From IMG/VR virus record IMGVR_UViG_3300009545_000018, positions 62,001 to 126,000 of that record: 64,000 nucleotides of DNA; one strand, given 5' to 3'. Under the pieces are notes generated by a model that searched no databases, was not told the origin of the DNA, and worked only from the letters and a program-made list of their open reading frames with translations. A program made the position numbers and the translations under genes. This document shows, one piece after another, positions 14,206-54,013 of the stretch (positions are counted from its first letter, which is position 1; each line of letters starts with the position of its first letter).

Positions 14206-14679
14206 ATGAAGTATTCAAAAGAATTACTATCTAAACTAGTTTCTGAATGTACTACTGTTGCAGAGCTAATGAGAAAGTTAGGACTCCAACAATCTGGAGG
14301 AACACATTCATTTTTAACTAAAAGAATAAAATCATTTAGTATTGACACATCTCATTTTGTTGGTTCTGCTTTTAATGCGGGACTAAATCATGTAGGCGGT
14401 CCAGAGAAACTATGTTCAACAGATGTTTTAGTCCTAGATAGGCTTAACGGTCAAAGAGAGAAATCTTTTAGATTAAAGAGAGCATTATTAGAATCTAACA
14501 TAAAAGAAGAGTGTGAACAATGTGGTGTGAGTACTATTTGGAATAATAAACCAATTACACTTCATATTGATCATAGAGATGGTAATGGTCTAAATAATTG
14601 TATAGAAAATTTAAGGTTCCTTTGTCCTAATTGTCATTCTCAAACGGACAATTATGGATCTAAAAATATTGGAAAATAA
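14206..14679 (+). CDS. HNH homing endonuclease
   Basis: CEQC...LHIDHRDG...N..ENLRFLCPNCH. Confidence 0.9.
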   Translation: MKYSKELLSKLVSECTTVAELMRKLGLQQSGGTHSFLTKRIKSFSIDTSHFVGSAFNAGLNHVGGPEKLCSTDVLVLDRLNGQREKSFRLKRALLESNIKEECEQCGVSTIWNNKPITLHIDHRDGNGLNNCIENLRFLCPNCHSQTDNYGSKNIGK

Positions 14680-16298: not shown

Positions 16299-16305
16299 AA
16301 TAATT

Positions 16306-17364
16306 ATGACTGAAATTTTATTAGCAAAACCAAAATTATCTTCTGATTTTATTGATTCTTCCGTTGGCGAGCCTTACATTATTCGCAAGCATCTCTTTGA
16401 TATGTTTACATGGGACGAGGATGTTGGAGCTGTTGATCTATCATATCCTTTTCCTCAAGGATATGAGCCGTTAGTTAAGATGTTGGAAGATAAACATCAA
16501 GCTCCAGTTATTATAACAAATGGCGCAAAACAAGCCTTGGGTGGGGCTTTTTACTCTCTACAAAAAATGGGTAAAATTAGAATGGGAATGAGAAAGCCAT
16601 ATTGGGCACTCATTCCTCCACTAGCAGAAATGCATGGAATTGTTCCGACTTTTCCAAAACAAGATGTGGATTGTCACCCAAATTTAACAATAGCTAAATT
16701 TAAGGATGACTTTAATCCAAAAGATTTAGATAGTTATTTATGTATAAATCCTAACAATCCTGATGGTTGGGTATCAAATGATATAGAAAATTTGTATTTA
16801 TTATTTGAGAGTCACAAGATTCCATTCATATTTGATGGCGCTTATTATCATGATATGTATATGCAAGGCACATATCCTAAACATAAGCAACTTGGTGACG
16901 TTCAAATTTATACTTTTTCTAAGTCTTTAGGTTTATCTGGACTTAGATTAGGGTACGCTGTTTGTCATAATACAGAGTTTTATAAACACATGTCTGCTTA
17001 TATGGAAGCTATGACAGTTGGAGTATCAACTATATCTCAAAGATATCTTTATAATTTACTTCAATCTATGAATCAGGATCCGGAACTAGTTCGTTCTTTT
17101 GAAGAAAGATGTTTTCTTTCTTTGTTAGAAAACAAAAAAGAATGTTTAAATATTAATCCGGAAGTTTTGGAATTGCCAAGTAATTTTACAGATATTCCAG
17201 GAATGTTTGGATGGTGTAAAGTAGGACCTAAAGCTGATTTTAATAAAGCTAAAATTCATTTTGTTGGTGGTAAGTTATTTGGTGCTGAGGATATGATACG
17301 AATAAATTTAGCTTTTGAAAATCATGTAATCAAAGATATTGTAAATAGATTGAATTCATTATGA
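16306..17364 (+). CDS. PLP-dependent class I/II aminotransferase
   Basis: NPNNPDG, DGAY, TFSKSLGLSGLRLGY. Confidence 0.85.
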   Translation: MTEILLAKPKLSSDFIDSSVGEPYIIRKHLFDMFTWDEDVGAVDLSYPFPQGYEPLVKMLEDKHQAPVIITNGAKQALGGAFYSLQKMGKIRMGMRKPYWALIPPLAEMHGIVPTFPKQDVDCHPNLTIAKFKDDFNPKDLDSYLCINPNNPDGWVSNDIENLYLLFESHKIPFIFDGAYYHDMYMQGTYPKHKQLGDVQIYTFSKSLGLSGLRLGYAVCHNTEFYKHMSAYMEAMTVGVSTISQRYLYNLLQSMNQDPELVRSFEERCFLSLLENKKECLNINPEVLELPSNFTDIPGMFGWCKVGPKADFNKAKIHFVGGKLFGAEDMIRINLAFENHVIKDIVNRLNSL

Positions 17365-34964: not shown

Positions 34965-36155
34965 ATGCAAGTAATATATACTGGTGAAAAAATACCTAAG
35001 AAGATAACGAAATCAATATTTTTGGCTGGACCATCTGCTCGTCCTGGACAAGAAGATGAAGTAGCTCATTGGCGTCATGATGCTATTAAGATCTTAGAAG
35101 ATAAGGGGTTTGACGGAGTAATATTTAGTCCAGAAAATAGGGACGGTTCTTTTGGTAAGGATTTTGATTATGATGATCAAATAGATTGGGAAGATGAGTG
35201 TCTTAATATTGCTGATTGTATTTTGTTTTGGGTTCCACGAGATTTATCACTAGATTCTAATGGTAATTTGAAATTAGGAGGACTTACAACTAATGTGGAA
35301 TTTGGCGCATGGTGTAATTCTGGCAAAGTATTATTTGGTGCTCCCCCTAAAGCAGATAAAGTAAGATATTTACAACGTTATGCTGATACCTATAATTTAG
35401 GTAATTATGAAAATTTAACGGAACTATTACAGGCAGCTATAGATAAATTGGGAAATGGCGCTGAAAGAAATGAGGGGGAAAGATATGTTCCATTAATGAT
35501 TTGGAATACTCCATCTTTTCAATCTTGGTATACAGCGCAAACTAATGCTGGTAATGTCTTAGAGACTGCCAAATTATTATATTCTTTTCGACCCGGGTTT
35601 AAAGACTTTGTATTTCTCTGGATTCTTAAAGTTGAAGTTTATATTACATCAGAAAAAAGAAGCAAAACAAATGAATTTGTTCTCGCCAGAACAGATACAT
35701 CTTCTGTTGTTATGTGGTATCCAGAAGGTGAATCTATTGAGGAGAATTTAGTTGTCTTAATAAAAGAATTTAGATCTCCAGCATCTACGGAAGATGGTTT
35801 CATTTATGAAAATGCCGGCGGATCTTCTCATAATCCAAAAGAAGATGCTTTTGACACTGCTATTGAAGAAGTACACGAGGAGACAGGGCTTATGATTGAT
35901 AGTAAAAGATTAAAATCAATGCAATCTAGACAAGTCTGTGGAACATTATCTTCTCATAAAAATTATTTATATTCTTATCAATTAAATAAAGAAGAATTAG
36001 ATTGGCTAAAATCTCAAGATGGAATTGCTCATGGAGTAGAAGAAGATACGGAAAGATCTTTTGTTACTATTTCTAGTGTGGGAGAAATATTGCAAAGCAC
36101 TAATGTAGATTGGGCTAATTTGGGCGCTATATTATCAGTAATAGTTAAAAATTAA
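34965..36155 (+). CDS. nucleoside 2-deoxyribosyltransferase-like / NUDIX fusion
   Basis: IFLAGP, QIDWE, ILFWVPR, TNVEFG; C-terminal AGG..TAIEEVHEETG. Confidence 0.82.
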   Translation: MQVIYTGEKIPKKITKSIFLAGPSARPGQEDEVAHWRHDAIKILEDKGFDGVIFSPENRDGSFGKDFDYDDQIDWEDECLNIADCILFWVPRDLSLDSNGNLKLGGLTTNVEFGAWCNSGKVLFGAPPKADKVRYLQRYADTYNLGNYENLTELLQAAIDKLGNGAERNEGERYVPLMIWNTPSFQSWYTAQTNAGNVLETAKLLYSFRPGFKDFVFLWILKVEVYITSEKRSKTNEFVLARTDTSSVVMWYPEGESIEENLVVLIKEFRSPASTEDGFIYENAGGSSHNPKEDAFDTAIEEVHEETGLMIDSKRLKSMQSRQVCGTLSSHKNYLYSYQLNKEELDWLKSQDGIAHGVEEDTERSFVTISSVGEILQSTNVDWANLGAILSVIVKN

Positions 36156-37823: not shown

Positions 37824-39404
37824 TTGATTATGGTATCTAAAAATTTATTTAAGTCTACAGGTTCAGTTAAGAAAGCAATTAAACCAGTTAATGCTGTTAA
37901 TAATGCGGGCGGTGTGGCTTATACTATGGATGATAAGGCTGCCTTAGCGCAACTTGCCATGACTGGTTGTTTTAATGGAACTTATTATGTTGATGCTAAA
38001 GATCAACTTAATCAAGTTGTTGCTCTTGCTAATAAGCTTCCAGTAGAGTTCGTGGCAAAGTTAGCAGTATATGCTCGCCAAGAAGGTTTTATGAAGGATA
38101 TGCCTGCAGTATTAGCCGCAGTTGTTGCTAGCAAAGATACTGTTCTTTTATCCAAGATCTTTCCAAAGGTTATTGATAATCCAAAAATGGTTCGTAACTT
38201 TGTACAAGTTATTCGTTCTGGAGTAACAGGCAGAAAAAGTTTGGGAACCCGTCCTAAGAAATTAATTCAAAATTATTTGAATTCATTAACTGATGAGCAG
38301 TTGTTTAAGGCTGATGTAGGTAATAGCCCTTCATTACAAGATATTATTAAGTTAGCTCGTCCTAAGCCAGCTACTAAGAATCGCTCTGCTTTGTATGGTT
38401 ATTTGCTAGACAAGGAATATAATCCAGAAGACTTATGTTCCTTGGTTCAAGAGTTTGAATCTTTCAAAAAAGAAATGAGTTTGGATATTCCAAATGTTCC
38501 ATTTCAAATGTTAACAGCTTTGCCATTAACTGATAAGCATTGGAGCAAGATTGCTGAAAATGCAACCTGGAATCAAACCAGAATGAATTTAAATACTTTT
38601 GCTCGTCATAAGGTATTTGAAGATGCTACTACTTTAAACCTATTGGCTGAGAGATTAGCTGATTCTTCACAAATTGCAAAAGCAAAGGTATTCCCATATC
38701 AATTGTTTGCTGCATTTAAAAATGTAACTGCAGATGTTCCTAAGAAATTAACTAATGCTTTACAAAAAGCAGCGGATGCTTCGCTGGAAAATATTCCAGC
38801 TATTGAAGGTGAAGTTCACGTTTTAGTTGATGTATCAGGCAGCATGAGTAGCCCAGTCACTGGTAATCGTGGTTTTGTCACTAGTACTATGCGTTGTATT
38901 GATGTAGCAGCCTTAATGGCTTCTGCATTAATGCGCAAGAATGAAGATACTAAGGTATATCCATTTGATACTAGAGTTCATAATCATTCATTGAATCCAA
39001 TGGATTCAGTGATGACTAATGCGGCAACTCTTGCTGCATTTGGTGGTGGAGGAACTGATTGTGGTATGGCGTTAGAGAATTTAAATAAGCAGAAAGCCAA
39101 AGGCAATCTTGTTATTTATGTTTCTGATAATGAGTCTTGGGTAGATACTACTCCTAATTCCTATTATTCTCAAAGAGGTACTAAGGTAATGGAAGAGTGG
39201 AATAAATATAAAGCTCGTAATCCAAAAGCCAAATTGGTTTGTATTGATGTCACTCCTAATAAAACCACTCAAGCTCATAATAGAGAAGATATAATCAACA
39301 TTGCAGGATTTTCTGATCAAGTATTCGATGTTATTGCATTATTCCAAAAATTTGGCAATAATAAAGATCTTTGGGTTCAAACCATTGACTCAGTAGAAAT
39401 GTAA
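37824..39404 (+). CDS. rsr: Ro60 / TROVE-domain RNA-binding protein
   Basis: NNAGGVAY, LAQLAMTG.FNGTYY, YARQEGFMKDMP, MNLNTFARH, vWA DVSGSM, GGGGTDC, SDNESW. Confidence 0.93.
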   Translation: MIMVSKNLFKSTGSVKKAIKPVNAVNNAGGVAYTMDDKAALAQLAMTGCFNGTYYVDAKDQLNQVVALANKLPVEFVAKLAVYARQEGFMKDMPAVLAAVVASKDTVLLSKIFPKVIDNPKMVRNFVQVIRSGVTGRKSLGTRPKKLIQNYLNSLTDEQLFKADVGNSPSLQDIIKLARPKPATKNRSALYGYLLDKEYNPEDLCSLVQEFESFKKEMSLDIPNVPFQMLTALPLTDKHWSKIAENATWNQTRMNLNTFARHKVFEDATTLNLLAERLADSSQIAKAKVFPYQLFAAFKNVTADVPKKLTNALQKAADASLENIPAIEGEVHVLVDVSGSMSSPVTGNRGFVTSTMRCIDVAALMASALMRKNEDTKVYPFDTRVHNHSLNPMDSVMTNAATLAAFGGGGTDCGMALENLNKQKAKGNLVIYVSDNESWVDTTPNSYYSQRGTKVMEEWNKYKARNPKAKLVCIDVTPNKTTQAHNREDIINIAGFSDQVFDVIALFQKFGNNKDLWVQTIDSVEM

Positions 39405-39737: not shown

Positions 39738-40061
39738 ATGAAAACCATGTTGTTTGAAAAAACTATTAATTTAGTTAAAACTTTAAGAGAAACATTCACA
39801 ACTCGATGTTTACATAATCAAAAATTGCCCCTTTTTAGTTGGTTACATAGAAATTCTAGTAACTTTTCGAATGAAGAGTTTGAAGAGTTTTGGAAATTTT
39901 TAGTAATTTTATTTAAATATAAATATAAGGATATGAGCTTATTTTATGAAGCAGGAGAGTCTCCATTAGAAATGTTTGATTTTAGAGCAAACAAAGATCA
40001 AATCAATGACTTTATTTCTTTATTAGAAAATAAAATTAATAAATTGAAAGCTTTTATTTAA
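39738..40061 (+). CDS. small KAF-tag protein
   Basis: ends KLKAFI. Confidence 0.65.
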   Translation: MKTMLFEKTINLVKTLRETFTTRCLHNQKLPLFSWLHRNSSNFSNEEFEEFWKFLVILFKYKYKDMSLFYEAGESPLEMFDFRANKDQINDFISLLENKINKLKAFI

Positions 40062-40897
40062 TGATTAAAAGAAATGGTATTGAAATTAAGACTGCCCAAG
40101 CTCCAAATATAGTAGCAGCAAAAGATACTTTAAATATTCTTAAGAATAAAAATTATCTTGTTAAAGATAAGATCATAGATATTTCAGTGGCATTAGATAA
40201 TTCAATTAAAAATACTAAGTTATATTTGCCAGAAGATTGTTTTAATAGTAAAAATAATTTAATTAAACCTACTATAGAGGTAACAAATGAAACTACTACC
40301 TCTGCTGGGTTAAGATTATTAAATAGTGGTTTAGAAAATATTGTAGCTTTGAATTTTGCCTCAGCTAGAAATGTTGGGGGCGGATTTTTAGCGGGGGCAG
40401 TTGCCCAAGAAGAAGATTTGTGTCGGTGTTCTGGATTATATCTTTGTATTAAAAGCAAACCTATCTTTTATAATAAAAACATTTTATGTGATGATACTTT
40501 CTATACTAATCATATTATTTACTCACCCAATGTTCCTTTCTTTCGTAATGATAATCTAGATCTTTTAGAAGAGATATTCCACATTTCTATTATTTCTGCG
40601 CCCGCACCTAATGTTAGAGCTATGGAGAATGTTGATGAAGATAATTTAAGAAGCATATTAGAAATAAGGGCAGCTAGAATTTTACAGATTGCTATTGAAA
40701 ATAATCATGAAAATATTATCTTAGGAGCTTGGGGCTGTGGTGCTTTTGGTAATGATTCTAAAATGATAATTGAGGTTTTTCAAAAGGTATTAAATAGATA
40801 TCCTCATTTCAAACATGTTTGTTTTGCCGTCTTTGATAATAAAATAAATGCCCCTATTTTCAATGCATTTAAAGAAGCATTTGAAAATAATGAATGA
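40061..40897 (+). CDS. TIGR02452 / bacterial PARG-like ADP-ribose glycohydrolase
   Basis: LNFASARNVGGGF..GAVAQEEDLCRCS, LGAWGCGAFGND. Confidence 0.9.
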   Translation: MIKRNGIEIKTAQAPNIVAAKDTLNILKNKNYLVKDKIIDISVALDNSIKNTKLYLPEDCFNSKNNLIKPTIEVTNETTTSAGLRLLNSGLENIVALNFASARNVGGGFLAGAVAQEEDLCRCSGLYLCIKSKPIFYNKNILCDDTFYTNHIIYSPNVPFFRNDNLDLLEEIFHISIISAPAPNVRAMENVDEDNLRSILEIRAARILQIAIENNHENIILGAWGCGAFGNDSKMIIEVFQKVLNRYPHFKHVCFAVFDNKINAPIFNAFKEAFENNE

Positions 40898-45935: not shown

Positions 45936-45963
45936 TTGACAACAAGTAAGTCGGAGTTATAAT
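45936..45963 (+). promoter_or_regulatory. sigma70-like promoter
   Basis: TTGACA-N16-TATAAT. Confidence 0.75.
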
Positions 45964-46212: not shown

Positions 46213-46302
46213 GGGGAAGTAGCTCAGCCGGCCAGAGCGCTTTACTGTTTTATAAAACGAATAGTGAAGAGGTCGATGGTTCAAATCCATCCTTCCCCAC
46301 CA
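46213..46302 (+). tRNA. tRNA with 20-nt anticodon loop, identity uncertain
   Basis: GGGGAAG/CTTCCCC+ACCA, canonical D and T arms; anticodon arm extended to about 11 bp. Confidence 0.75.
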
Positions 46303-46374
46303 TGAATCAAATGCAGATAAGATTACATTTAACAGTTAATTAAAAAAGCATCTTATCAATAATTTGTTGATTCA
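46303..46374 (+). ncRNA. scaffold-family ncRNA copy A
   Basis: TGAATCAA/TTGATTCA, GATAAGAT/ATCTTATC, ATGC and TACATT motifs. Confidence 0.7.
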
Positions 46375-46380
46375 TTTAAT

Positions 46381-46464
46381 GCCGTAGTTGGACAGTGTGG
46401 TGAGTCCAAGACGCTGTAAACGTCCCGGTAAACTTTGTAGGTTCGATTCCTACCTGCGGCACCA
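46381..46464 (+). tRNA. tRNA-Tyr(GTA)
   Basis: loop CT-GTA-AA, long variable arm, ACCA. Confidence 0.9.
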
Positions 46465-46518
46465 AAAGATAAAGCAAAGTAATTTGCCTTGTTATTTGAC
46501 AACTTAATAGTTATGTAT

Positions 46519-46593
46519 TGGGTAGTAATGTCAACCTGGTAGACGCCTCCGTTTGGATCGGAGAAGTTGCGAGTTCAAATCCCGCCTACCCAA
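46519..46593 (+). tRNA. tRNA-Pro(TGG)
   Basis: CTCCG/CGGAG stem, TT-TGG-AT; no encoded CCA. Confidence 0.85.
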
Positions 46594-46653
46594 CAAATAT
46601 AAATGATTTCATATAGTTAGCAAAGCCAAAGTATTTGGTCAACAAAGTATGGT

Positions 46654-47622
46654 TTGAACTGTTATATATTCTGTATGATTGTCATACAGAAACGATCTTT
46701 TTCTTTAGAAGAGTTAAGAGAAATATTCAAAAGTTCATTGTCAAAGCAAGATGTTGCCATAAAGTTAGGTTTTACTTATAGTAATGGGAAAGTTTATAAA
46801 AAAATTGAGAAACTTTCTATTGAATATAATTTATCGACGGATCATTTTGATCCATTTTTAAGTCAAAGATTAAATACAAAATTTCCTAAAATAGAAAAAG
46901 AATGTCCTATATGCGGTAATTTATTTGAAACTAAACATGGACATCGTGATGAAAAAATTACTTGCTCAATATCATGCTCTAATACTTATTTTGCTCCTAG
47001 TAAACACACTGAATTATCAAATTTAAAAAGATCGTTAAAGCTTTTAAAAAATTCAAAAAATGAAACTGTCAATATAATAAAAGTTCGTAAAAAACGTAAA
47101 AAGAATTTTAAATTAAAAGCTGTTGTTTTATATATTAAGTCTTGTGAATTTTGTGATTATGATTTTGAAACTTATAATAAAAATAAAAGATTTTGCAATA
47201 TATCATGTCAAATCAAACATAATTGGGAAGATCCCAATTATCGTATTAATATTATAAATAAAGCTAATGAAAGAGTTACAAATGGAACCCATAATGGGTG
47301 GTCATCAAGATCAAAACTAAAACCTTCTTATGCTGAACAATATGTTATCAATCTTTTAGATGAGTTAAAAATAACAAATATTACTCGAGAATACAAAATT
47401 AACAAATGGTTTATTGATTTTGCTGATATAGATAGAAAATTAGCTTTAGAAATAGATGGTAAACAACATGAATTACCAGAACGTAAGGCTTCGGATCAAG
47501 TTAAAGATCAATATTTAAAAGATAATGGTTGGACCATTTTAAGAATAAAATGGAAAAAGATAACAGCAGAATTTAGAGAAGAATTAATAAAAGTTTTGCA
47601 AAATTTCACAAGGATCATATAA
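46654..47622 (+). CDS. homing endonuclease, Vsr/DUF559-like
   Basis: CPIC and CxxC Zn motifs, IDFAD..LALEIDGKQH..D..L..GWTILRIKW. Confidence 0.82.
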   Translation: MNCYIFCMIVIQKRSFSLEELREIFKSSLSKQDVAIKLGFTYSNGKVYKKIEKLSIEYNLSTDHFDPFLSQRLNTKFPKIEKECPICGNLFETKHGHRDEKITCSISCSNTYFAPSKHTELSNLKRSLKLLKNSKNETVNIIKVRKKRKKNFKLKAVVLYIKSCEFCDYDFETYNKNKRFCNISCQIKHNWEDPNYRINIINKANERVTNGTHNGWSSRSKLKPSYAEQYVINLLDELKITNITREYKINKWFIDFADIDRKLALEIDGKQHELPERKASDQVKDQYLKDNGWTILRIKWKKITAEFREELIKVLQNFTRII

Positions 47623-48026
47623 TGAATTTTAAAGATGCTCAAGACAAGTTTGATAATGAAATTAAATCAAAATCAACTATTGTAACACATAATAAAAATG
47701 CTGTAAATCAATATAGATGTTTCGACGCTGGTCTTGTCTTAAGAACGTTAAGACAACTATCTATTTCGAATCATATAGTTGATTTATATAATTTTTTTAC
47801 ATCACATCCATTTAAAATTAATAATACTTCAGATTTAGATAATTTAAGAAATAAAATTAAACTTGCAAACCAAGATTTGAGTAAATTTAGGGAGGTGGAG
47901 TTTAATTCTTATAAAGTAATAAATGAATCTTTGATTTTATCAATTGAAAAAGATATAGAATTTATTATTTCTTCTTTTAAAGAATTAGAAAAAGCTCTAC
48001 GTGATATACAAGATTCAGAAATTTAA
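47622..48026 (+). CDS. hypothetical protein
   Basis: ORF track. Confidence 0.5.
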   Translation: MNFKDAQDKFDNEIKSKSTIVTHNKNAVNQYRCFDAGLVLRTLRQLSISNHIVDLYNFFTSHPFKINNTSDLDNLRNKIKLANQDLSKFREVEFNSYKVINESLILSIEKDIEFIISSFKELEKALRDIQDSEI

Positions 48027-48053
48027 TATTACAACATTAAAGGAAAACACAAC

Positions 48054-48215
48054 ATGAACGAAATAACTGATTTAAAACCGTATTTAAAATATAACAATGG
48101 CGTGGTTACCGTCTTGAAGGTATTAGCCTTCCCATTAAACTGGGTAGCTGATGTATTCGAAAATTGGAGTCGCAAGCGCACACAAAAGAAATGTGAAAAG
48201 TGGCTATCTGAATAA
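48054..48215 (+). CDS. small hypothetical protein (53 aa)
   Basis: AAGGA SD, MNEITDLKPYL...WLSE. Confidence 0.5.
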   Translation: MNEITDLKPYLKYNNGVVTVLKVLAFPLNWVADVFENWSRKRTQKKCEKWLSE

Positions 48216-48319
48216 TTTTATACTACTAGAGTAGTATTCTTTTATCTATACTGGTTGAGTTACCCAGCTAAAATATAAACTTCCAGGCACGGTAGCCTGG
48301 TTAATCAAAACCGATTTAT

Positions 48320-48397
48320 AGGCTTCTAGCTTAACTTTTAGAGCAAGGGACATAAAGAGTCCCGTGGATCTTGGTGTAAATCCAAGGGAGCCTGCCA
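48320..48397 (+). tRNA. atypical tRNA-like RNA (loop AT-AAA-GA)
   Basis: AGGCTTC/GGAGCCT+GCCA, GGGAC/GTCCC, T-loop TGTAAAT, D-loop lacks GG. Confidence 0.65.
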
Positions 48398-48402
48398 TTT
48401 AT

Positions 48403-48484
48403 TGCGGGGTAGAGGAGTATGGTTATCTCACCAGCCTCATAAGCTGTGGTATACGTGGGTTCAAATCCCACCCTTCCGCAACCA
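48403..48484 (+). tRNA. tRNA-Met(CAT)
   Basis: CT-CAT-AA loop, TTCAAAT T-loop, ACCA; slightly irregular acceptor junction. Confidence 0.8.
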
Positions 48485-48552
48485 CTGGATGGTGGTTACC
48501 AAATCCGCAAAGGGGTATAGAAATATACTCGGAGGATTGAATCCACTATTAT

Positions 48553-48687
48553 GCAATTCTGGTATAATGGCATTACTGACTCTAAAAAGAGTATCACTTA
48601 CAAAGAAACCTGTGAGGCTACCAGGAAATTATTGTAAGAATAACGCCTTGCCTGGCGTAGATGTTGGTTCGATTCCAACGGATTGCA
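48553..48687 (+). ncRNA. tRNA-like RNA with multi-hairpin central insertion
   Basis: GCAATTC/GGATTGC, D arm, GTTGG-TTCGATT-CCAAC; about 80 nt of hairpins replace anticodon/variable arm. Confidence 0.6.
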
Positions 48688-48691
48688 TTAA

Positions 48692-48782
48692 GTGATGTTT
48701 GATAAGTAATCACGCCAGAAACATGATTTATCATGTTTGCCCTGATCAGCCTGGTAGTTAGGTGCAAATCCTAAGCATCACA
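48692..48782 (+). ncRNA. tRNA-like RNA with branched anticodon arm
   Basis: GTGATGT/GCATCAC, TTAGG-TGCAAAT-CCTAA, AAACATGA/TCATGTTT hairpin inside CCAG/CTGG. Confidence 0.55.
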
Positions 48783-48798
48783 ACAACTGAGTTTATAT

Positions 48799-49079
48799 GC
48801 CCGAATCCCTATATTGGTTAAGACATATAGACAATAGTCCGGTCTTAGGCTACCATTAAGGAGTAATCCTTTTAGAGACCACTGCTTCGGTGTGGGCAAA
48901 CCCGGCATTTAGGTGGAAAGCCTAATAAATTTTGCTTGATTAAATAGTTTCTTGCTACAAGATCAACGGTGTACAACGAATCTTGCTATTTAATTGGGAA
49001 GTCTTATAATTGTGGACTTGGTGAAACAGGTATAAGGCGAATTACGCTCGATATTGGATAAAACTAACATTGGGCGCCA
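48799..49079 (+). ncRNA. 281-nt structured RNA ending in GCCA
   Basis: GCCCGA/TTGGGC terminal stem plus GCCA; GTAA, cTTCGg, GCAA tetraloops. Confidence 0.55.
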
Positions 49080-49143
49080 TGAATCAAATCCGTATAGGAA
49101 TACATTCGGAAAAAATAAATCTTATACACTACTTGTTGATTCA
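49080..49143 (+). ncRNA. scaffold-family ncRNA copy B
   Basis: TGAATCAA/TTGATTCA, GTATAGGA/TCTTATAC, TACATT. Confidence 0.7.
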
Positions 49144-49148
49144 ATTAT

Positions 49149-49225
49149 TGTCGATTAGCTCATCGTTAGAGCGCCCGGCCGTAAGAGTCTGGAGGTACTA
49201 GGTTCAATTCCTAGATCGACAACCA
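49149..49225 (+). tRNA. tRNA with irregular anticodon arm (Thr-CGT-like, uncertain)
   Basis: TGTCGAT/ATCGACA+ACCA, good D and T arms; loop region CCGTAAGAGT. Confidence 0.65.
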
Positions 49226-49337
49226 TGTAACAAATGCCAGGGCAGCATTACATTTATTGGAATTAAATCCGATGAGGCTCGACTCCTCTTAAGGTCCGGT
49301 GACAGGCAAAACATGTTGCTCATTATTTGTTGTTACA
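49226..49337 (+). ncRNA. scaffold-family ncRNA copy C
   Basis: TGTAACAA/TTGTTACA, GGCAGCAT/ATGTTGCT, TACATT; cargo includes GAGG-CTCGACT-CCTC. Confidence 0.7.
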
Positions 49338-49465
49338 AATTTTTGACAGTATATCTAAACTGTATAGTGTGAGTTATGCGCAAGGGATAATTACCTAAGT
49401 AGCAACTATAGGTTTGCTAGTTAATCCTACACATGAATCAGAGTTAACCTGAAAACTAGCACAAT

Positions 49466-49539
49466 GCGAGTATGGCATAATGGTTGTGTCCCATGTTTCC
49501 AACTTGGTTATCTCAGTTCGATTCTGAGTACTCGCTCCA
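49466..49539 (+). tRNA. tRNA-Gly(TCC)
   Basis: GCGAGTA/TACTCGC, T73, TT-TCC-AA, CCA. Confidence 0.9.
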
Positions 49540-49591
49540 TGCCCACTAACTTAATTACATAAAAGTAAGGTTGTCGGGGCGCCAAATTTAC

Positions 49592-49666
49592 GTTCTGGTC
49601 GTCTAAATAATTAGGACATCTCCGCGAAAGGGGAAGATATTGGAGAATTACCAATCTGGAGCGCCA
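49592..49666 (+). ncRNA. non-canonical tRNA-like RNA
   Basis: GTTCTGG/CTGGAGC+GCCA, T-loop AGAATTA, anticodon loop GCGAAA. Confidence 0.6.
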
Positions 49667-49753
49667 TAAGTTAGTGGCTGGAAATCATTTAAGCGAGTTC
49701 AAATGCAATAACAGTCCGCCTAATTGCTCGTATATTAGGTAACTTAATTTTAT

Positions 49754-49830
49754 GCCCCTGTCGTCGTAAAAAGTCAGGACATCTCCAGTAATAGGAGAAG
49801 ATGTTGGAGAATTGCCAACTGGGGGTGCCA
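49754..49830 (+). ncRNA. non-canonical tRNA-like RNA, paralog of 49592-49666
   Basis: GCCCCTG/TGGGGGT+GCCA, TCTCC/GGAGA, T-loop AGAATTG. Confidence 0.6.
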
Positions 49831-50132
49831 AAGGCAAGTAAGGACCAGGAAGCCTTATGAGCTGCTGGTTTTTCATATAGGGAACTAGCCTGGTTAGTCC
49901 TATATGAGAACCAACCAATGTCTTTAAATAAAGAAATTTATATAAGGACACCATGATTAATTTGTGCAGCTGACTTATATTGGATTTCGCGATCTGATAT
50001 ATGAGTGCTGGAAAATACGGAAAGTTGGAAAACTGATGCACACCGTATAAGTTAACTAAATCACTAACTGTTATTATCTACGCGAATAGATAAAAACAAA
50101 GTAATTAGTTAATTATAATTAATCAAAAACTT

Positions 50133-50226
50133 TAGCAAATGCAGTAAGGATTACATTGGTTATAGTCAATCGAAAGATTGATGGTGGGTATCGATTCCCA
50201 CAGTATCTTTACAAAACTTGTTGCTA
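50133..50226 (+). ncRNA. scaffold-family ncRNA copy D
   Basis: TAGCAA/TTGCTA, GTAAGGAT/ATCTTTAC, TACATT; cargo GNRA hairpin plus GTGGG-TATCGATT-CCCAC. Confidence 0.7.
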
Positions 50227-50230
50227 TTAT

Positions 50231-50367
50231 TCCGAGGTACGTCTAATGGTAAGACACGCGGCTGTGGGAACTATAGGTTAATAATAAGTCCCGTTCGATT
50301 CGGGCAGTTCCAAGAATAACCGCGCGGTGGTAACACTTTGTAGGTTCGAGTCCTACCCTCGGAGCCA
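50231..50367 (+). tRNA. tRNA-Asn(GTT)-like gene with 51-nt insertion in the anticodon
   Basis: TCCGAGG/CCTCGGA+GCCA; CGCGG-CTGT[50266-50316]TAA-CCGCG. Confidence 0.75.
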
Positions 50368-50392
50368 TTATATTAAATAAAAGGAAAGTACT

Positions 50393-50554
50393 ATGCAAGT
50401 TCAAATACATCTTTACAATCAATCCAATCCTATTGTGTTGGAACATGTAACTAATGCTTATCAAAAAGGTGATTTTTATTGTGTTATGTTTGCTAGTAAA
50501 CTAGTTCAAAAGTTTCCAATTCAACATATATTTAGAATAATAGAAACTCCTTAA
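50393..50554 (+). CDS. small hypothetical protein (53 aa)
   Basis: AAGGA SD, MQVQIHLYNQSNPI... Confidence 0.55.
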   Translation: MQVQIHLYNQSNPIVLEHVTNAYQKGDFYCVMFASKLVQKFPIQHIFRIIETP

Positions 50555-50557
50555 TGT

Positions 50558-51330
50558 ATGATTTCAAAATTAACAATCAAATCTTATGGAGTGACAGTAA
50601 CTCTTCCCAGTGAAATTCTAATTTTAGAAGATTGTATCTGGGCTAAAACTGGTGAACATTTAGCTTTAGGAAAAGACAAAAATATTATGGGTAATGATTG
50701 TTTTATTGTCCTTAGAAAAAACGGAGTTGTTATTTCTGGACCTTCTCCTTTAATTCATTCGGTTGGAGCAAATAGTTTAATTTATCAAGAGTGTTCGGTA
50801 GAAAAATATTATAAAATGAAAGCATTTTTGTAATGATCAAATATGTTGATGATAACGGTAAAGAAAAAATTTTACCTGAAAAAATAGTTATACTAAAATG
50901 TCCTGATAGTTGGCTTATTGAGCCTGGAGATTATATAGAATTTATTCATACATATTATCTTCATATGAGGATCTCCAGCTTTGAAATCAAAGTTTTAAAA
51001 GGATATCATAAGAATAAAATATTTGATTTACTCTTTAGTCATTTATCTAAGATTGAATATGTAAGCATAGAAAAGTTTGAAAAACTAAAGGCGTTTGTTT
51101 AAATGGAAACCAAGTGGATTTTAGTAACACAACAAAACTCTGTTTACTATAATAAAATCTTAGAATTAAAAGAAGGTTGGACATCAACCATTTATAATGG
51201 GACTATTGTTTGGTTTATTGAGTCAGTAAATGGTCAAGTTAGACATTATCCGGATTGGTTTGAGTTAAACGATTTGCCAACACATACAGTAGTAACAAAG
51301 GATGCCCTTAATTTATTAGCCTTTTTATAA
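50558..51330 (+). CDS. array of three KAF-tag proteins (50558-50833, 50833-51102, 51103-51330)
   Basis: ends KMKAFL, KLKAFV, NLLAFL. Confidence 0.7.
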
Positions 51331-51336
51331 AAAACT

Positions 51337-51579
51337 TTAGATGAATGCCGCAATGGAATACATATACAACCGATAGCTGAATGTCGCAAGACATTCAATA
51401 TCTCCGATTTCATAAAAGAGATATGAACCAACCTAAAGGAATTCCTATAAGGATAAACTATGTGACTGACAAACTTGAAGCCAGTTAAAGCTCAAGTCCT
51501 CTATGGTATTATTAGGATAAGATATACTGTGCTATTGGATAAAATTAATCGCACTTTCTATTGCATTCTTGTCATCTAA
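51337..51579 (+). ncRNA. scaffold-family ncRNA copy G (large cargo)
   Basis: TTAGATGA/TCATCTAA, ATGCC, GCAATGGAA/TTCTATTGC, TACAT, CTTG. Confidence 0.62.
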
Positions 51580-51591
51580 TTAACTTTTCAT

Positions 51592-51720
51592 TTAAATGAA
51601 TGCCGATTCGGGAATACATTAAACACAAAGATACTGCAGCATGTGCCAGGCTAATCCACATGTACCTTAGGAGTACTCAGGGTAAAGTGTACCGACTTCT
51701 CAATCACCTTTGTCATTTAA
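51592..51720 (+). ncRNA. scaffold-family ncRNA copy H
   Basis: TTAAATGA/TCATTTAA, ATGCC, GATTCGGGAA/TTCTCAATC (imperfect), TACATT, TTTG. Confidence 0.62.
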
Positions 51721-51721
51721 C

Positions 51722-52962
51722 ATGAATTACTTAAAACACACATTAGATAACGGCACAGTATTAGAAATACCAGAAGAATTTATGGTATTAGATAATTTAC
51801 CATCAGAAGATCTACATTACAAAGTAGAATTAATTCTTGATTTTATTAGAGGCTGGGTATTTAAAATAACCCATATAAATGGTTTAGAACTAACTCAATA
51901 TAAAGAAGATCCAACATGGATTTGTTATTTTAGTCCAGAAAAGATTTTTAATAAAAAAATTATACCATGTTCACTTGAAAAATTTAACAATATGAAAGCA
52001 TTTTTATAATGTCAAAAGAAGAAAAACCATTATCACCTTATGAGATAAGAAGATTAGGTCATTGCAAAGAAACAGAGCAGTGTGTTGATGATCTATATTG
52101 TAATTGTCCTTGTTTACCTTGTTCTAAGCAAGATTGTTTTAGACCAGGATGTAAATGTGGTAGAACTCATCCATATAAAAATTAATGTACTTACATATCC
52201 ATGATAAAGATGTTCCATCTTCTATTTTAGTTTTAGAAGACTCAAAAACTCACACCATTGAAAAGAATTCTCATTTTGTTTTTAGAAAAATTAAGTATAA
52301 TGAATATTGTGTTGATTTTTTTAATGGTAAAGATAATCGTTATTCTTATGCAAGATATTCAGAAGATGATTTATATCGTATGTTTTTTGATGGCAAATTA
52401 AAATATAAAGAATTTTCTTTAGCCCAGTTTAATAAAATAAAAGCATTTTTATGAAATATTATATTATTGAGGATACAGTAGTTCCAAGTGAGTTCATTAT
52501 AATTCATGATACAGATTTATGTAGAATTTATAATATTTATCCAGAGTTTAATAGAAATATTTATACTCATAAGAATTTTTTTGATTATATAAGCTACGAT
52601 CTTGATTATAATTTTATTTCGATTGCTACCATGCCAGGCAGTCAATTACTAAGTTATATTGATAATAATAAGTTATTTCCAATAGAAAAGTTTAATAGTT
52701 TAAAGGCTTTCTTATGAAATATATTCAAACTGCTAAATATAATTATCCAGAAGAAATATTTGTAACACAAAGTTTCTTTAGACACGAGTGGACTAATAAA
52801 CACTTGGTATTAAAACAATATAATGAATATGTATTAAGTGTATTTTTAATAAATGGGGAAGAGCCCTCACATCCAATGGCTATTACCAATAATTTCATTC
52901 ATGAGGCTAATTTTTTAGAAATGTCTTTAGAAAGATATTTAAAGATTAAATCTTTCTTATAA
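51722..52962 (+). CDS. four KAF-tag proteins (51722-52009, 52185-52454, 52451-52717, 52714-52962) and a Cys-rich 58-aa ORF (52009-52185)
   Basis: ends NMKAFL, KIKAFL, SLKAFL, KIKSFL; overlapping start/stops. Confidence 0.7.
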
Positions 52963-52985
52963 TAACTTGATATATAGTAATTCAT

Positions 52986-53059
52986 GCCTTCATCGTTCAA
53001 TGGTAGGACGCTGGATTGTCACTTCAGTAACAGCGGATCGTAACCGCTTGGAGGCGCCA
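52986..53059 (+). tRNA. tRNA-Asp(GTC) with atypical T-loop
   Basis: GCCTTCA/TGGAGGC+GCCA, TT-GTC-AC, T-loop ATCGTAA. Confidence 0.85.
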
Positions 53060-53066
53060 TTATTAT

Positions 53067-53142
53067 CCGCTATGAGTCTCTTGGTTGAGCTGAAGGTTCT
53101 TATAAAGCTTTTGGACAAGTTCAAATCTTGTATGGCGGACCA
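53067..53142 (+). tRNA. degenerate tRNA-like element
   Basis: CCGCTAT/ATGGCGG+ACCA, ACAAG-TTCAAAT-CTTGT; weak D and anticodon arms. Confidence 0.5.
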
Positions 53143-53197
53143 TGAGGAATATTCCTCACTTTGCACATGGTATCCATGTGATAATTTAGGAGCACTC

Positions 53198-53476
53198 ATG
53201 TTAGATAATAGAGATGGTTATATTTGTCCCGATCAGCGTGTTGGATTTAATAATCATTCAGGTTTGAATTTTTCTGATATATCTTCAGAAGAATATCGAA
53301 TTTATGAATTTGAAAGCGGAAGATCAATCTTAATAAATAAACCATTAAGATTAAATGTCTCACCAAGTGGTGGACATAGGGTATTTGATGAAGATAAAGT
53401 ATCTCATTATATTCCTAAAGGTTGGATTCATCTTAAATGGAAAGCCAGAGAAGGTCAACCTAATTTTGTGAAATGA
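53198..53476 (+). CDS. hypothetical phage protein
   Basis: AGGAG SD before ATG 53198; DISSEEYRIYEF..SGGHRV..SHYIPKGW; the track's earlier start overlaps tRNAs. Confidence 0.7.
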   Translation: MLDNRDGYICPDQRVGFNNHSGLNFSDISSEEYRIYEFESGRSILINKPLRLNVSPSGGHRVFDEDKVSHYIPKGWIHLKWKAREGQPNFVK

Positions 53477-53516
53477 ATTTATCAAGCAATAATATTAAGT
53501 TATTATTGCTTTGACT

Positions 53517-53586
53517 ATGGACAAATTAGATAAGGATTACATTTTATTGGAAAAACAAACATCTTTGTCAACTACTTGTTGTCCAT
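53517..53586 (+). ncRNA. scaffold-family ncRNA copy E
   Basis: ATGGACAA/TTGTCCAT, GATAAGGAT/ATCTTTGTC, TACATT. Confidence 0.7.
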
Positions 53587-53589
53587 TAT

Positions 53590-53666
53590 GGTACATAGGC
53601 GAATCTAGTGAACGCAAAACCCTGAAGAGGTTTGGAGCCCAGAGCGTAACTTGGGATGTACCACCA
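53590..53666 (+). tRNA. tRNA-Phe(GAA) with atypical T-loop
   Basis: GGTACAT/ATGTACC+ACCA, AAACC-CTGAAGA-GGTTT, T-loop AGCGTAAC. Confidence 0.8.
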
Positions 53667-53782
53667 AGAAAGGTAGCGCCTTTCAGCCTGCTCACATGGA
53701 CGAAACTGTGACGTTCCCTCTTGGCTGTATAGCTCAAGTAGTAAAAGGGACAGCCGGTTCACCTGGTTGGAAACGGTGATAA

Positions 53783-53859
53783 AGTCATCTAGTTTAATGG
53801 TAAAACGCCATCACATTTATGTGCCGGCGGAGATCTGGGTTCGAGTCCCAGGATGATTT
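53783..53859 (+). tRNA. degenerate tRNA with expanded anticodon loop
   Basis: AGTCATC/GATGATT, canonical D and T arms, 13-nt loop, no CCA. Confidence 0.55.
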
Positions 53860-53862
53860 CTA

Positions 53863-54013
53863 TGAAAACAAATGCCCGTACAAGGATTACATTCATTATA
53901 GGAACGTGAAGAAAGTTCGATTCTTTCCGCAGCGACCAAACTAAAAACAATTGCTGCGTGGTGTATTGGTTAACACACGAAAAAAACATCTTTGTCAATT
54001 TTTGTTGTTTTCA
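53863..54013 (+). ncRNA. Y RNA-like ncRNA: scaffold copy F with circularly permuted tRNA domain
   Basis: TGAAAACAA/TTGTTTTCA, ACAAGGAT/ATCTTTGT; inside: T arm, CGCAGCG-ACCA, linker, TGCTGCG, D arm. Confidence 0.78.

What the first reader, a model, noticed from the sequence alone, without database searches (positions are those of the whole stretch)
46303..54013. Eight-member modular ncRNA family with a shared co-varying terminal scaffold and variable cargo
Seen: copies at 46303-46374, 49080-49143, 49226-49337, 50133-50226, 51337-51579, 51592-51720, 53517-53586 and 53863-54013. Each has the layout stem1, ATG(C), stem2, TACAT(T), cargo, stem2', YTTG, stem1' (two copies read ATCC or ATTA instead of ATGC). 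Stem sequences differ but keep pairing. Stem1: TGAATCAA/TTGATTCA, TGTAACAA/TTGTTACA, TAGCAA/TTGCTA, TTAGATGA/TCATCTAA, TTAAATGA/TCATTTAA, TGGACAA/TTGTCCA, TGAAAACAA/TTGTTTTCA. Stem2: GATAAGAT/ATCTTATC, GTATAGGA/TCTTATAC, GGCAGCAT/ATGTTGCT, GTAAGGAT/ATCTTTAC, GCAATGGAA/TTCTATTGC, ACAAGGAT/ATCTTTGT. Cargo runs from a short A-rich loop through T-arm mimics and a whole permuted tRNA to about 190 nt. Three copies start right after an upstream CCA. Established: Y RNAs use a terminal stem to bind Ro60 and a separate effector domain. Inference: this is a phage Ro60-docking scaffold displaying interchangeable effector or decoy modules. I do not recognise this motif from described RNA families.
Basis: partly seen in the sequence, partly recalled or inferred. 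Interest (0 to 1): 0.95.

Follow-up and report, generated by a model that had tools for sequence, protein, structure and literature searches.

The report
Eight phage Y RNAs for Ro60
Eight small structured RNAs in a giant phage's tRNA island are real, but they are Y RNAs, the already described partner RNAs of the Ro60 protein that the same phage encodes, so this is a large new set of a known RNA class and not a new class.

Summary
All eight copies are at the stated coordinates with the stated layout. A covariance model built only from bacterial sequences recovers exactly these eight and nothing else. The scaffold is neither new nor phage-specific. It is the Ro60 (Rsr)-binding module of bacterial Y RNAs of the YrlA/YrlB lineage. 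In GC-richer relatives the 5' box reads GNCGAAUGC, which is the published GNCGAAN0-1G motif, and the UACAU box is the published YUAY. Longer relatives match Rfam YrlA over its full length (up to 45 bits, E about 1e-6, below the gathering score). In a motif-first scan of bacterial genomes, 104 of 120 loci held a Ro60 gene just upstream on the same strand. In Ro60-first phage loci, all 196 model hits lay on the Ro60 strand. Stem covariation is strong. Its "not a described family" claim is wrong. What is unusual here:
- There are eight paralogues, against one to five in bacterial loci.
- They are spread through a tRNA island 6.9-14.6 kb from Ro60, often abutting tRNAs.
- The CGAA box has degenerated to CAAA or UGAA.
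- Two large cargo modules (about 85 and 190 nt) are unassigned, one of them conserved in a related phage.

The parts
37824..39404 (+). Ro60 (Rsr/TROVE plus vWA) gene, the presumed protein partner of the eight RNAs
   Evidence: Pfam vWA_Ro60 E 1.4e-15 and TROVE E 7e-8. Best PDB sequence matches are phiRo60 9KOP/9L5Y (E 2e-14) and Rsr 2NVO. The clade profile matches 2NVO, 1YVP, 9NEN and 9KOP over the full length.
46303..46374 (+). Y RNA copy 1, minimal form with a 20-nt A-rich loop as cargo
   Evidence: R2 47.4 bits, E 4e-13. Starts 0 nt after tRNA 46213-46302 and ends 6 nt before tRNA-Tyr 46381. Fold.
49080..49143 (+). Y RNA copy 2, minimal form with the AUCC junction variant
   Evidence: R2 36.6 bits. 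Preceded by a tRNA-like element ending GCGCCA. Ends 5 nt before tRNA-Leu 49149.
49226..49337 (+). Y RNA copy 3, about 58-nt cargo with two hairpins, one with a T-loop-like CUCGACU loop
   Evidence: R2 33.9 bits. Starts 0 nt after tRNA-Leu. Orthologous copies lie in related phage contigs: L076:16467-16570 (73% over 104 nt), L066, L052, L064, L058.
50133..50226 (+). Y RNA copy 4, about 47-nt cargo: a GAAA-capped hairpin plus a T-arm-like hairpin with an 8-nt loop
   Evidence: R2 40.8 bits and R1 37.2 bits as a non-training sequence. An insertion-bearing tRNA at 50231-50364 begins 5 bases downstream, after a 4-nt gap.
51337..51579 (+). Y RNA copy 5, about 190-nt cargo of unknown kind
   Evidence: R2 24.6 bits, E 6e-6, filters off. 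All descriptor features are present. The cargo core (CUGACAAACUUGA...AAAGCUCAAGU) and the scaffold are conserved in L062:19203-19432. No Rfam match.
51592..51720 (+). Y RNA copy 6, about 85-nt cargo of unknown kind
   Evidence: R2 34.2 bits and R1 32.4 bits with filters off. No Rfam match. Ends 1 nt before the ATG at 51722 of the next ORF.
53517..53586 (+). Y RNA copy 7, minimal form with the AUUA junction variant
   Evidence: R2 34.1 bits. 80% identical over 51 nt to L003:8233-8279. Followed by an uncalled tRNA-like element ending ACCA (read).
53863..54013 (+). Y RNA copy 8, YrlA-type with a circularly permuted tRNA-like module
   Evidence: Module parts, read: T arm 53911-53927 (GAAAG-UUCGAUU-CUUUC), acceptor-like 3' strand 53928-53934 followed by encoded ACCA 53935-53938, loop, acceptor-like 5' strand 53952-53958, and D arm 53961-53976 with GG in its loop. 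R2 28.6 bits. Strict T arm found. It aligns with relatives that match Rfam YrlA, and the T arm and acceptor-like stem covary. Orthologue L056:16159-16295, 77% over 145 nt. Starts 3 nt after tRNA-Met.

Best explanation
The eight elements are Y RNAs of the bacterial YrlA/YrlB lineage, encoded by a roughly 448-kb phage that also encodes a Ro60 orthologue.

**Anatomy (shown)**
- The 5' and 3' ends pair to form stem 1.
- The top three pairs of stem 1 are the CGA of the published CGAA box. Here they read CAA or UGA, and the 3' partner changes to match.
- Next is an asymmetric internal loop, 5' A-U-G-C-(N) opposite 3' A-N-Y-N-Y-U-U-G. Its A, U, U and G are invariant across 49 phage copies.
- Stem 2 follows. 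It corresponds to the anticodon-stem equivalent of YrlA.
- Stem 2 is capped by an invariant UACAU, which is the YUAY/UA kink of YrlA.
- The variable middle is the second module.

**Mechanism (inferred by homology)**
- Stem 1, the loop and stem 2 dock on the outer surface of the phage Ro60 ring.
- The variable module then tethers Ro60 to a partner or gates its cavity, as in the Ro60-Y RNA-PNPase complexes of Deinococcus and of Thermus phage phiLo.
- Copy 8 presents a tRNA-like module, as YrlA does. Copies 1, 2 and 7 are minimal and YrlB-like. Copies 3-6 carry other modules.

**Processing (inferred from layout)**
Most copies lie 0-6 nt from tRNA or tRNA-like genes. They are probably cut out of polycistronic tRNA transcripts by RNase P and the tRNA 3'-end enzymes.
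For: 1. **Independent model.** R2, built only from bacterial sequences that sit mostly just downstream of Ro60 genes, finds exactly the eight copies.
2. **Published motifs.**
   - GC-richer relatives carry the literal GNCGAAN0-1G...YUAY of Chen et al. 2014, for example GCCGAAUGC...GGGAUUAC (PMC4201824).
   - The same layout is seen in a mycobacteriophage YrlA.
3. **Rfam.**
   - Rfam YrlA RF02553 aligns end to end with larger family members, all below the gathering score of 69. Examples: L025:12340-12475 at 45.1 bits, E 7e-7; L010:8687-8820 at 44.8; L010:8304-8439 at 43.4; L014:13420-13563 at 36.
   - The positive-control mycobacteriophage YrlA scores only 28.8 bits.
4. **Linkage, Ro60 first.**
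   - There are 49 plus 147 R1 hits at E<=0.01 in about 1.7 Mb around phage Ro60 genes.
   - All are on the Ro60 strand and none is on the other strand.
   - Hits occur in 49 of the 62 second-batch loci.
5. **Linkage, motif first.**
   - 104 of 120 bacterial loci hold a Ro60 gene, always on the same strand.
   - The motif lies 15-1180 nt past the end of that gene.
   - At least 7 of 23 IMG/VR contigs that carry the motif also carry Ro60.
6. **Covariation** in both stems, and in the T arm and acceptor-like stem of c8-type members.
7. **Conservation of individual paralogues.** Orthologues of c1, c3, c5, c7 and c8 occur in related phages.
8. **Experimental precedent.**
   - Rsr co-immunoprecipitates YrlA and YrlB (PMC4201824).
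   - phiRo60 binds two phage Yrl RNAs through the CGAA box and forms a complex with host PNPase (PMC12135203).
Against: - There are no expression or binding data for this phage.
- No window copy has the literal CGAA box that matters for phiRo60 binding. Six read CAAA and two read UGAA. In phiLo, single substitutions cost only three- to four-fold in affinity (PMC12135203).
- No window copy matches Rfam YrlA, YrlB or Y_RNA, even at E<=10.
- The copies lie 6.9-14.6 kb from Ro60. That is further than the 4 kb or less reported by Chen et al., and further than the 15-1180 nt seen in bacteria.
- c5 scores low (24.6 bits), and only with filters off.
- The partner of each cargo is unknown.
Confidence: 0.85

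Rival explanations
1. The elements are processing or spacer hairpins of the tRNA island. They would help RNase P or the 3'-end enzymes separate neighbouring tRNAs and have nothing to do with Ro60.
For: Six of the eight window copies lie 0-6 nt from a tRNA or tRNA-like element, and many relatives do the same. For example, L025:6193-6336 has gaps of 4 and 7 nt.
Against: - Tandem arrays occur next to Ro60 in loci with no tRNA genes at all (L010 and L013 have 0 tRNAs).
- They also occur right after rsr in bacterial chromosomes.
- c5 and c6 lie between ORFs.
- Invariant single-stranded nucleotides and the YrlA matches are not explained by this reading.
Confidence: 0.04
2. The RNAs act without Ro60. 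They would be decoys or sponges for host tRNA-directed enzymes or defence nucleases, and the shared scaffold would only be a stable handle.
For: - c8 is a close permuted tRNA mimic with an encoded ACCA.
- Phage tRNA islands are generally thought to buffer attacks on host tRNAs (established knowledge, not tested here).
Against: - Only one of the eight has a canonical T arm, and three are minimal with no tRNA-like part.
- The conserved part is the scaffold, not the cargo.
- The scaffold tracks Ro60 genes across phyla.
Confidence: 0.07
3. Only some copies are functional Y RNAs. Others, such as c2 and c7 with their variant junctions, or c5 with its very long insert, are decaying duplicates.
For: - c2 reads AUCC and c7 reads AUUA. 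In 49 phage copies, 45 have G and 43 have C at these two positions.
- c5 has the lowest score.
Against: - All eight keep the invariant A-U, UACAU and UUG and have fully compensated stems.
- c7 and c5 have conserved counterparts in other phages.
Confidence: 0.12
4. The family is a dispersed DNA-level repeat, such as a REP-like element, a miniature mobile element, a recombination site or a terminator, and not an RNA.
For: It is multi-copy, intergenic and palindromic at its ends.
Against: - Strand bias is absolute relative to Ro60: 196 of 196 hits.
- Stems are kept by compensatory changes including G-U pairs, which only make sense in RNA.
- There are no target-site duplications and no T-runs after the stems.
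- The terminator scan finds nothing at the copy ends, apart from the internal c4 hairpin.
Confidence: 0.01

Closest known systems
YrlA (Rfam RF02553), the bacterial tRNA-like Y RNA (Chen et al. 2014, PMC4201824; structure in bioRxiv 10.1101/312249)
   Same: - The ends pair into a stem that carries the Rsr box (GNCGAAN0-1G).
- The next stem is the anticodon-stem equivalent.
- A conserved YUAY/UA follows, then a T arm, a closed acceptor-like stem and a D arm.
- c8 has exactly this order.
- GC-rich relatives of the family match RF02553 end to end.
- It is encoded on the Ro60 strand.
   Different: - The window copies do not reach any Rfam score.
- Their CGAA box reads CAAA or UGAA.
- Seven of the eight lack the full tRNA-like module.
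- They lie 6.9-14.6 kb from Ro60 and are mixed with tRNA genes.
- The family also conserves a 3'-strand YUUG, whereas only the 5' strand was recognisable in Salmonella and M. smegmatis YrlA (PMC4201824).
YrlB (Rfam RF02565), the second and shorter Rsr-bound RNA of Salmonella and M. smegmatis
   Same: It is a short Y RNA sharing the Rsr box and lacking the full tRNA-like domain, like c1, c2 and c7. It is encoded in tandem with YrlA.
   Different: Only weak sub-threshold similarity was seen, in relatives (27.3 bits, E 0.25 at L014:13633-13706). None was seen in the window.
Yrl1 and Yrl2 of Thermus phage phiLo, with phiRo60 (PMC12135203; PDB 9KOP, 9L5Y)
   Same: - These are phage-encoded Y-like RNAs next to a phage Ro60, with a stem-loop-stem layout and a CGAA box.
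- Binding was shown by EMSA and cryo-EM, and a complex forms with host PNPase.
- phiRo60 is the best single-sequence PDB match of the window protein.
   Different: - phiLo has two RNAs upstream of Ro60. Here there are eight, downstream and dispersed among tRNAs.
- The two proteins are distant in sequence (phmmer E 2e-14).
- No UACAU or YUUG conservation was reported there.
M. smegmatis YrlA
   Same: It has a 7-bp acceptor-like stem, is cleaved by RNase P and carries a CCA end (PMC4201824). c8 also has a 7-bp acceptor-like stem, and ACCA is encoded right after it. The same holds in its phage relatives L056, L058, L062 and L065.
   Different: Cleavage of c8 is only inferred. CCA is encoded here and not added.
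Metazoan Y RNAs and D. radiodurans Yrn1
   Same: A terminal stem binds Ro60 and a separate module binds effectors. Both helix strands are conserved. The 3' YUUG-stem recalls the CUUGAC of animal Y RNAs; that comparison is from my memory and is a lead only.
   Different: There is no match to Rfam Y_RNA. The bulged-C helix GGUCCGA is absent.

Membership tests
Bacterial Y RNAs of the YrlA/YrlB lineage (Chen et al. 2014) | Encoded near a Ro60/Rsr gene and on the same strand | tested here: met
   Ro60 is at 37824-39404 (+) and all eight copies are on the + strand. The distance, 6.9-14.6 kb, exceeds the 4 kb or less of the original survey. Close relatives show the same spacing of about 5-10 kb, for example L053, L056 and L064.
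Bacterial Y RNAs of the YrlA/YrlB lineage (Chen et al. 2014) | 5' Rsr-binding box GNCGAAN0-1G | tested here: not met
   - None of the eight window copies matches the literal box. They read CAAAUG (six copies) or UGAAUG (two copies).
- The homologous columns read CGA in 37 of 49 phage copies and in at least 46 of 55 bacterial copies.
- These columns are base-paired and change together with their 3' partners.
- The box is therefore present in degenerate, compensated form.
Bacterial Y RNAs of the YrlA/YrlB lineage (Chen et al. 2014) | Conserved YUAY (UA kink) just after the anticodon-stem equivalent, about 10 nt past the Rsr box | tested here: met
   UACAU is invariant. It reads UUAC in c1, c3, c4, c7 and c8, and AUAC in c2, c5 and c6, so the first Y is lost in three copies. 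The spacing is the same as in the mycobacteriophage YrlA.
Bacterial Y RNAs of the YrlA/YrlB lineage (Chen et al. 2014) | The 5' and 3' ends pair into a terminal stem with an internal loop | tested here: met
Bacterial Y RNAs of the YrlA/YrlB lineage (Chen et al. 2014) | Physical association with Ro60/Rsr | not testable with these tools
   This needs EMSA or RIP. Only linkage and homology are available.
Rfam YrlA RF02553 as curated | Score at or above the gathering threshold of 69 bits | tested here: not met
   - The window has no hit, even at E<=10.
- Relatives reach 31-45 bits over the full model.
- A genuine mycobacteriophage YrlA reaches only 28.8 bits, so the model is narrow.
Rfam YrlA RF02553 as curated | tRNA-like module: T arm, closed acceptor-like stem, D arm | tested here: met
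   Met for c8 only. c3 and c4 have loose T-arm-like hairpins. c1, c2, c5, c6 and c7 have none.
Animal-type Y RNA (Rfam Y_RNA) | Bulged helix GGUCCGA/UUGACC, and a match to the Rfam model | tested here: not met
   No Y_RNA match at E<=10 in the window or at E<=5 in three relatives.
Ro60/Rsr protein family (for the partner gene) | TROVE HEAT-repeat ring plus a C-terminal vWA domain | tested here: met
   Pfam TROVE and vWA_Ro60. Full-length profile matches to 2NVO, 1YVP, 9NEN and 9KOP.

The most novel reading that the evidence does not exclude
The eight paralogues form a set of adaptors that lets one phage Ro60 ring engage several different partners during infection. On this reading, the two large cargos (c5, which is conserved in a related phage, and c6) are new effector-binding or decoy modules. 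Embedding the RNAs in tRNA transcripts ties their production to the phage's tRNA supply, for example to counter host defences that cut tRNAs or to redirect host PNPase.
Probability: 0.25. Interest if true: 0.65.

Novelty: new member of a known kind. Interest (0 to 1): 0.4.

Why it matters
- **Open question.** What Ro60-Y RNA particles do in bacteria is understood in only a few cases, and in phages it is close to unknown. Only one phage system has been studied in vitro.
- **A natural test set.** This window and its relatives give one fixed scaffold with cargos from 9 to about 190 nt, as 8 paralogues here and 10-14 in some other phage contigs. That makes "which partner does each module recruit" directly testable.
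- **Better annotation.**
  - The comparison yields a sharper scaffold consensus: cggGcCGA-AUGC-N-G..GGGA-YUACAU ... UCUC..C-AAY-NYUUG-UCGgCccg.
  - The curated Rfam YrlA and YrlB models miss all of these copies.
  - A model such as R2 would annotate hundreds of unrecognised Y RNAs next to Ro60 genes in Acidobacteriota, Planctomycetota, Verrucomicrobiota, Rhodobacteraceae, Burkholderiales, Myxococcota and large phages.
- **Origin of Y RNAs.** The close packing with tRNA genes fits the published idea that these Y RNAs derive from tRNAs and use the tRNA processing machinery.

Tried and rejected
- **Rfam on the window.** Gathering thresholds, then E<=10 on 13.5 kb, then E<=10 on c5 and c6 alone. 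This gave only tRNAs and noise.
- **Megablast against 50,697 phage records.** The 8.4-kb region has no match. The phage is known only as IMG/VR contig IMGVR_UViG_3300009545_000018.
- **A plain TACAT search.** Uninformative: 172 hits against 201 expected.
- **MAFFT plus RNAalifold on 13 minimal copies.** Only stem 1 was predicted, because stem 2 was aligned in two registers. I supplied the majority register by hand and let Infernal realign.
- **R1 with default filters.** It missed c5 and c6. With filters off it recovered c6 but not c5. R2 with filters off found all eight.
- **Motif-first test in IMG/VR.** Inconclusive for 16 of 23 contigs. The bacterial genome scan settled the question instead.
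- **Two review papers on bacterial Y RNAs.** Not held in the library.
- **Kink-turn or loop-E reading of the internal loop.** I considered it and found no consensus match by eye. It was not pursued.
- **MAFFT pairwise alignment of c5 with L062.** The 5' ends were misaligned. Only the central block and the 3' end are trustworthy.

Full report
**1. The observation**

The region 46.2-54.4 kb of the window is a tRNA island in a 30.8% GC, phage-like sequence. All real genes are on the + strand.

Each of the eight stated intervals reads stem1, AU(G/C/U)(C/A), 0-3 nt, stem2, UACAU, cargo, stem2', 3-6 nt, YUUG, stem1'. RNAfold of each interval gives the two nested stems.

A descriptor of my own asks for pairing, UACAU and UUG but does not fix the stem sequences. 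It finds the eight, all on the + strand. It finds only a few loose hits elsewhere, and those lack the AU junction, apart from one hit inside an ORF at 16143-16441 whose junction begins AT.

**2. What it is**

ORF 37824-39404 is a Ro60 orthologue, with Pfam vWA_Ro60 and TROVE matches. Its nearest catalogued phage homologue is in Myxococcus phage Mx1, at 49.9% identity.

Mx1 has 56% GC. Its tRNA island holds two copies of the same layout with quite different stems: AGCCGA-AUGC...ACUACAU...AUUUUG-UCGGC and CAGUGA-AUGC...CUACAU...UUUUG-UCACUG.

IMG/VR gave 24 and then 80 loci with related Ro60 genes. The window's own contig, 447,763 bp long, is among them.

I built covariance model R1 from 13 minimal copies. 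Its results were:
- In the first batch of loci, 49 hits at E<=0.01, of which 36 were not in the training set.
- In the second batch, 147 hits.
- All 196 hits are on the Ro60 strand, and 49 of the 62 second-batch loci have at least one hit.
- Some loci hold long tandem arrays. By the 5' pattern there are 12 copies in L011 and 14 in L014. R1 finds 10 each in L044 and L048.

Both stems covary strongly.

**3. Link to the described family**

Chen et al. 2014 (PMC4201824) defined YrlA by these features, in order:
- a 5' GNCGAAN0-1G box thought to bind Rsr;
- a conserved YUAY at about nt 22-25;
- a T arm, a closed acceptor-like stem and a D arm.

The evidence that this family belongs to that lineage is as follows.
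- The GC-richer members carry those motifs literally, for example GCCGAAUGC-N-...GGGAUUAC. A mycobacteriophage YrlA has the same spacing.
- Rfam YrlA RF02553 aligns over its whole length with the larger members at 31-45 bits and E down to 7e-7, below its gathering score of 69. YrlB gives weak hits on minimal members.
- A bona fide mycobacteriophage YrlA reaches only 28.8 bits, so the Rfam model is narrow.
- Copy 8 has the YrlA order exactly. It aligns with the members that match Rfam, and its T arm and acceptor-like stem covary.
- The crystal-structure paper (bioRxiv 10.1101/312249) identifies the stem after the Rsr module as the anticodon-stem equivalent and the conserved UA as a kink. These map onto stem 2 and UACAU here.

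**4. Is the scaffold tied to Ro60?**

These span many phyla.
- In 104 of the 120 loci, the 8 kb or less of held DNA contains a Ro60 gene.
- In all 104 the gene is on the same strand, with the motif 15-1180 nt past its end.
- These bacterial loci hold 1-5 tandem copies, usually a minimal one first and longer ones after it.

Model R2 was built from 56 of these bacterial sequences only. It then finds exactly the eight window copies and nothing else.

**5. Mechanism**

Shown:
- the fold;
- the invariant nucleotides (loop A-U, UACAU, U..G of YUUG);
- the linkage to Ro60;
- the homology to YrlA;
- the abutment to tRNAs.

Inferred from the families involved:
- The scaffold docks on Ro60. This rests on the Rsr immunoprecipitation of YrlA and YrlB in PMC4201824, and on the EMSA and cryo-EM of phiRo60 with Yrl2 in PMC12135203, where the CGAA box matters.
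- The variable module recruits a partner such as PNPase, or gates the ring.
- The RNAs are released from tRNA precursors by RNase P and the tRNA 3'-end enzymes.
- c8 is probably nicked in its acceptor-like loop to expose its encoded ACCA, as M. smegmatis YrlA is.

Points against:
- The window copies have CAAA or UGAA in place of CGAA.
- They match no Rfam model.
- They are unusually far from Ro60.

**6. What is unusual here**

- There are eight paralogues, dispersed over 7.7 kb among tRNAs, tRNA-like elements and small ORFs.
- Several individual paralogues are conserved in related phages. c1, c3, c7 and c8 have counterparts. So does the core of the 190-nt cargo of c5, in L062.
- The cargos of c5 and c6 match nothing in Rfam.
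- By a strict rule only c8 carries a canonical T arm.

**7. Verdict**

The Ro60-scaffold reading is supported by homology and linkage, with no binding test. The claim of a new RNA family is not supported.

This is a large and somewhat divergent set of new members of the known bacterial and phage Y RNA class. A useful by-product is a scaffold model that finds many unannotated Y RNAs.

Noticed in passing
window 49585-49668, 49750-49832 and 48985-49079: Two clearly related tRNA-like elements of about 83 nt end in GCCA and have an odd T loop (UUGG-AGAAUUR-CCAA). Neither ARAGORN nor Rfam tRNA calls them. A weaker third relative ends GCGCCA directly before Y copy 2.
   Followed up: partly
window 53589-53668: An uncalled tRNA-like element lies 2-3 nt after Y copy 7. 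It has an acceptor-like pairing GGUACAU...AUGUACC followed by ACCA (read).
   Followed up: no
window 50231-50364, 46213-46302 and about 48538-48690: Three tRNA genes carry long insertions. One is a 134-nt tRNA (Rfam 39.3 bits). One is a 90-nt tRNA for which ARAGORN reports a 4-nt anticodon. One is an acceptor pair GCAAUUC...GGAUUGCA enclosing an extra roughly 80 nt.
   Followed up: no
window 50558-52962: Seven tandem small paralogous ORFs (75-95 aa) flank Y copies 5 and 6. Six of them end in a conserved ...EKFxK(M/L/I)KAFL-like tail, and the seventh (51103-51330) keeps only a shorter ...NLLAFL end.
   Followed up: partly
window 46654-47622: An ORF with DUF559/MTES_1575 endonuclease-like domains lies inside the tRNA island. 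It may be a homing-type endonuclease.
   Followed up: no
window 14679-16298, 6611-7753, 40061-40897, 34965-36155: The window also encodes a class II aminoacyl-tRNA synthetase (Asp/Lys/Asn type), a glutathionylspermidine synthase, a microbial PARG and a nucleoside 2-deoxyribosyltransferase-like protein.
   Followed up: no
L001 (Myxococcus phage Mx1) 8610-8732 and 9732-10109: An annotated 41-aa hypothetical CDS overlaps a Y RNA at about L001:8606-8711. A tmRNA gene (117.7 bits) lies where the record has no RNA feature and overlaps the short 'Hef-like endonuclease' CDS at L001:10005-10130.
   Followed up: partly
L014:3411-3775 and L025:4987-5360: Related Ro60-bearing phage contigs carry tmRNA genes and very large tRNA arrays. 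ARAGORN tRNAs in 18 kb of L014 and 42 in 22 kb of L025.
   Followed up: no
window 45936-45963: A perfect sigma-70 consensus (TTGACA, 16 nt, TATAAT) lies just upstream of the island. Promoter-like sites are not over-represented in the region overall.
   Followed up: no
L113-L172 (bacterial rsr loci): Bacterial Ro60 genes in many phyla are followed by 1-5 tandem scaffold copies. Typically a minimal one of about 65 nt comes first, then ones of 100-140 nt. The curated Rfam YrlA and YrlB models are too narrow to recover even the phage relatives tested at their thresholds; I did not run Rfam on these bacterial loci.
   Followed up: partly
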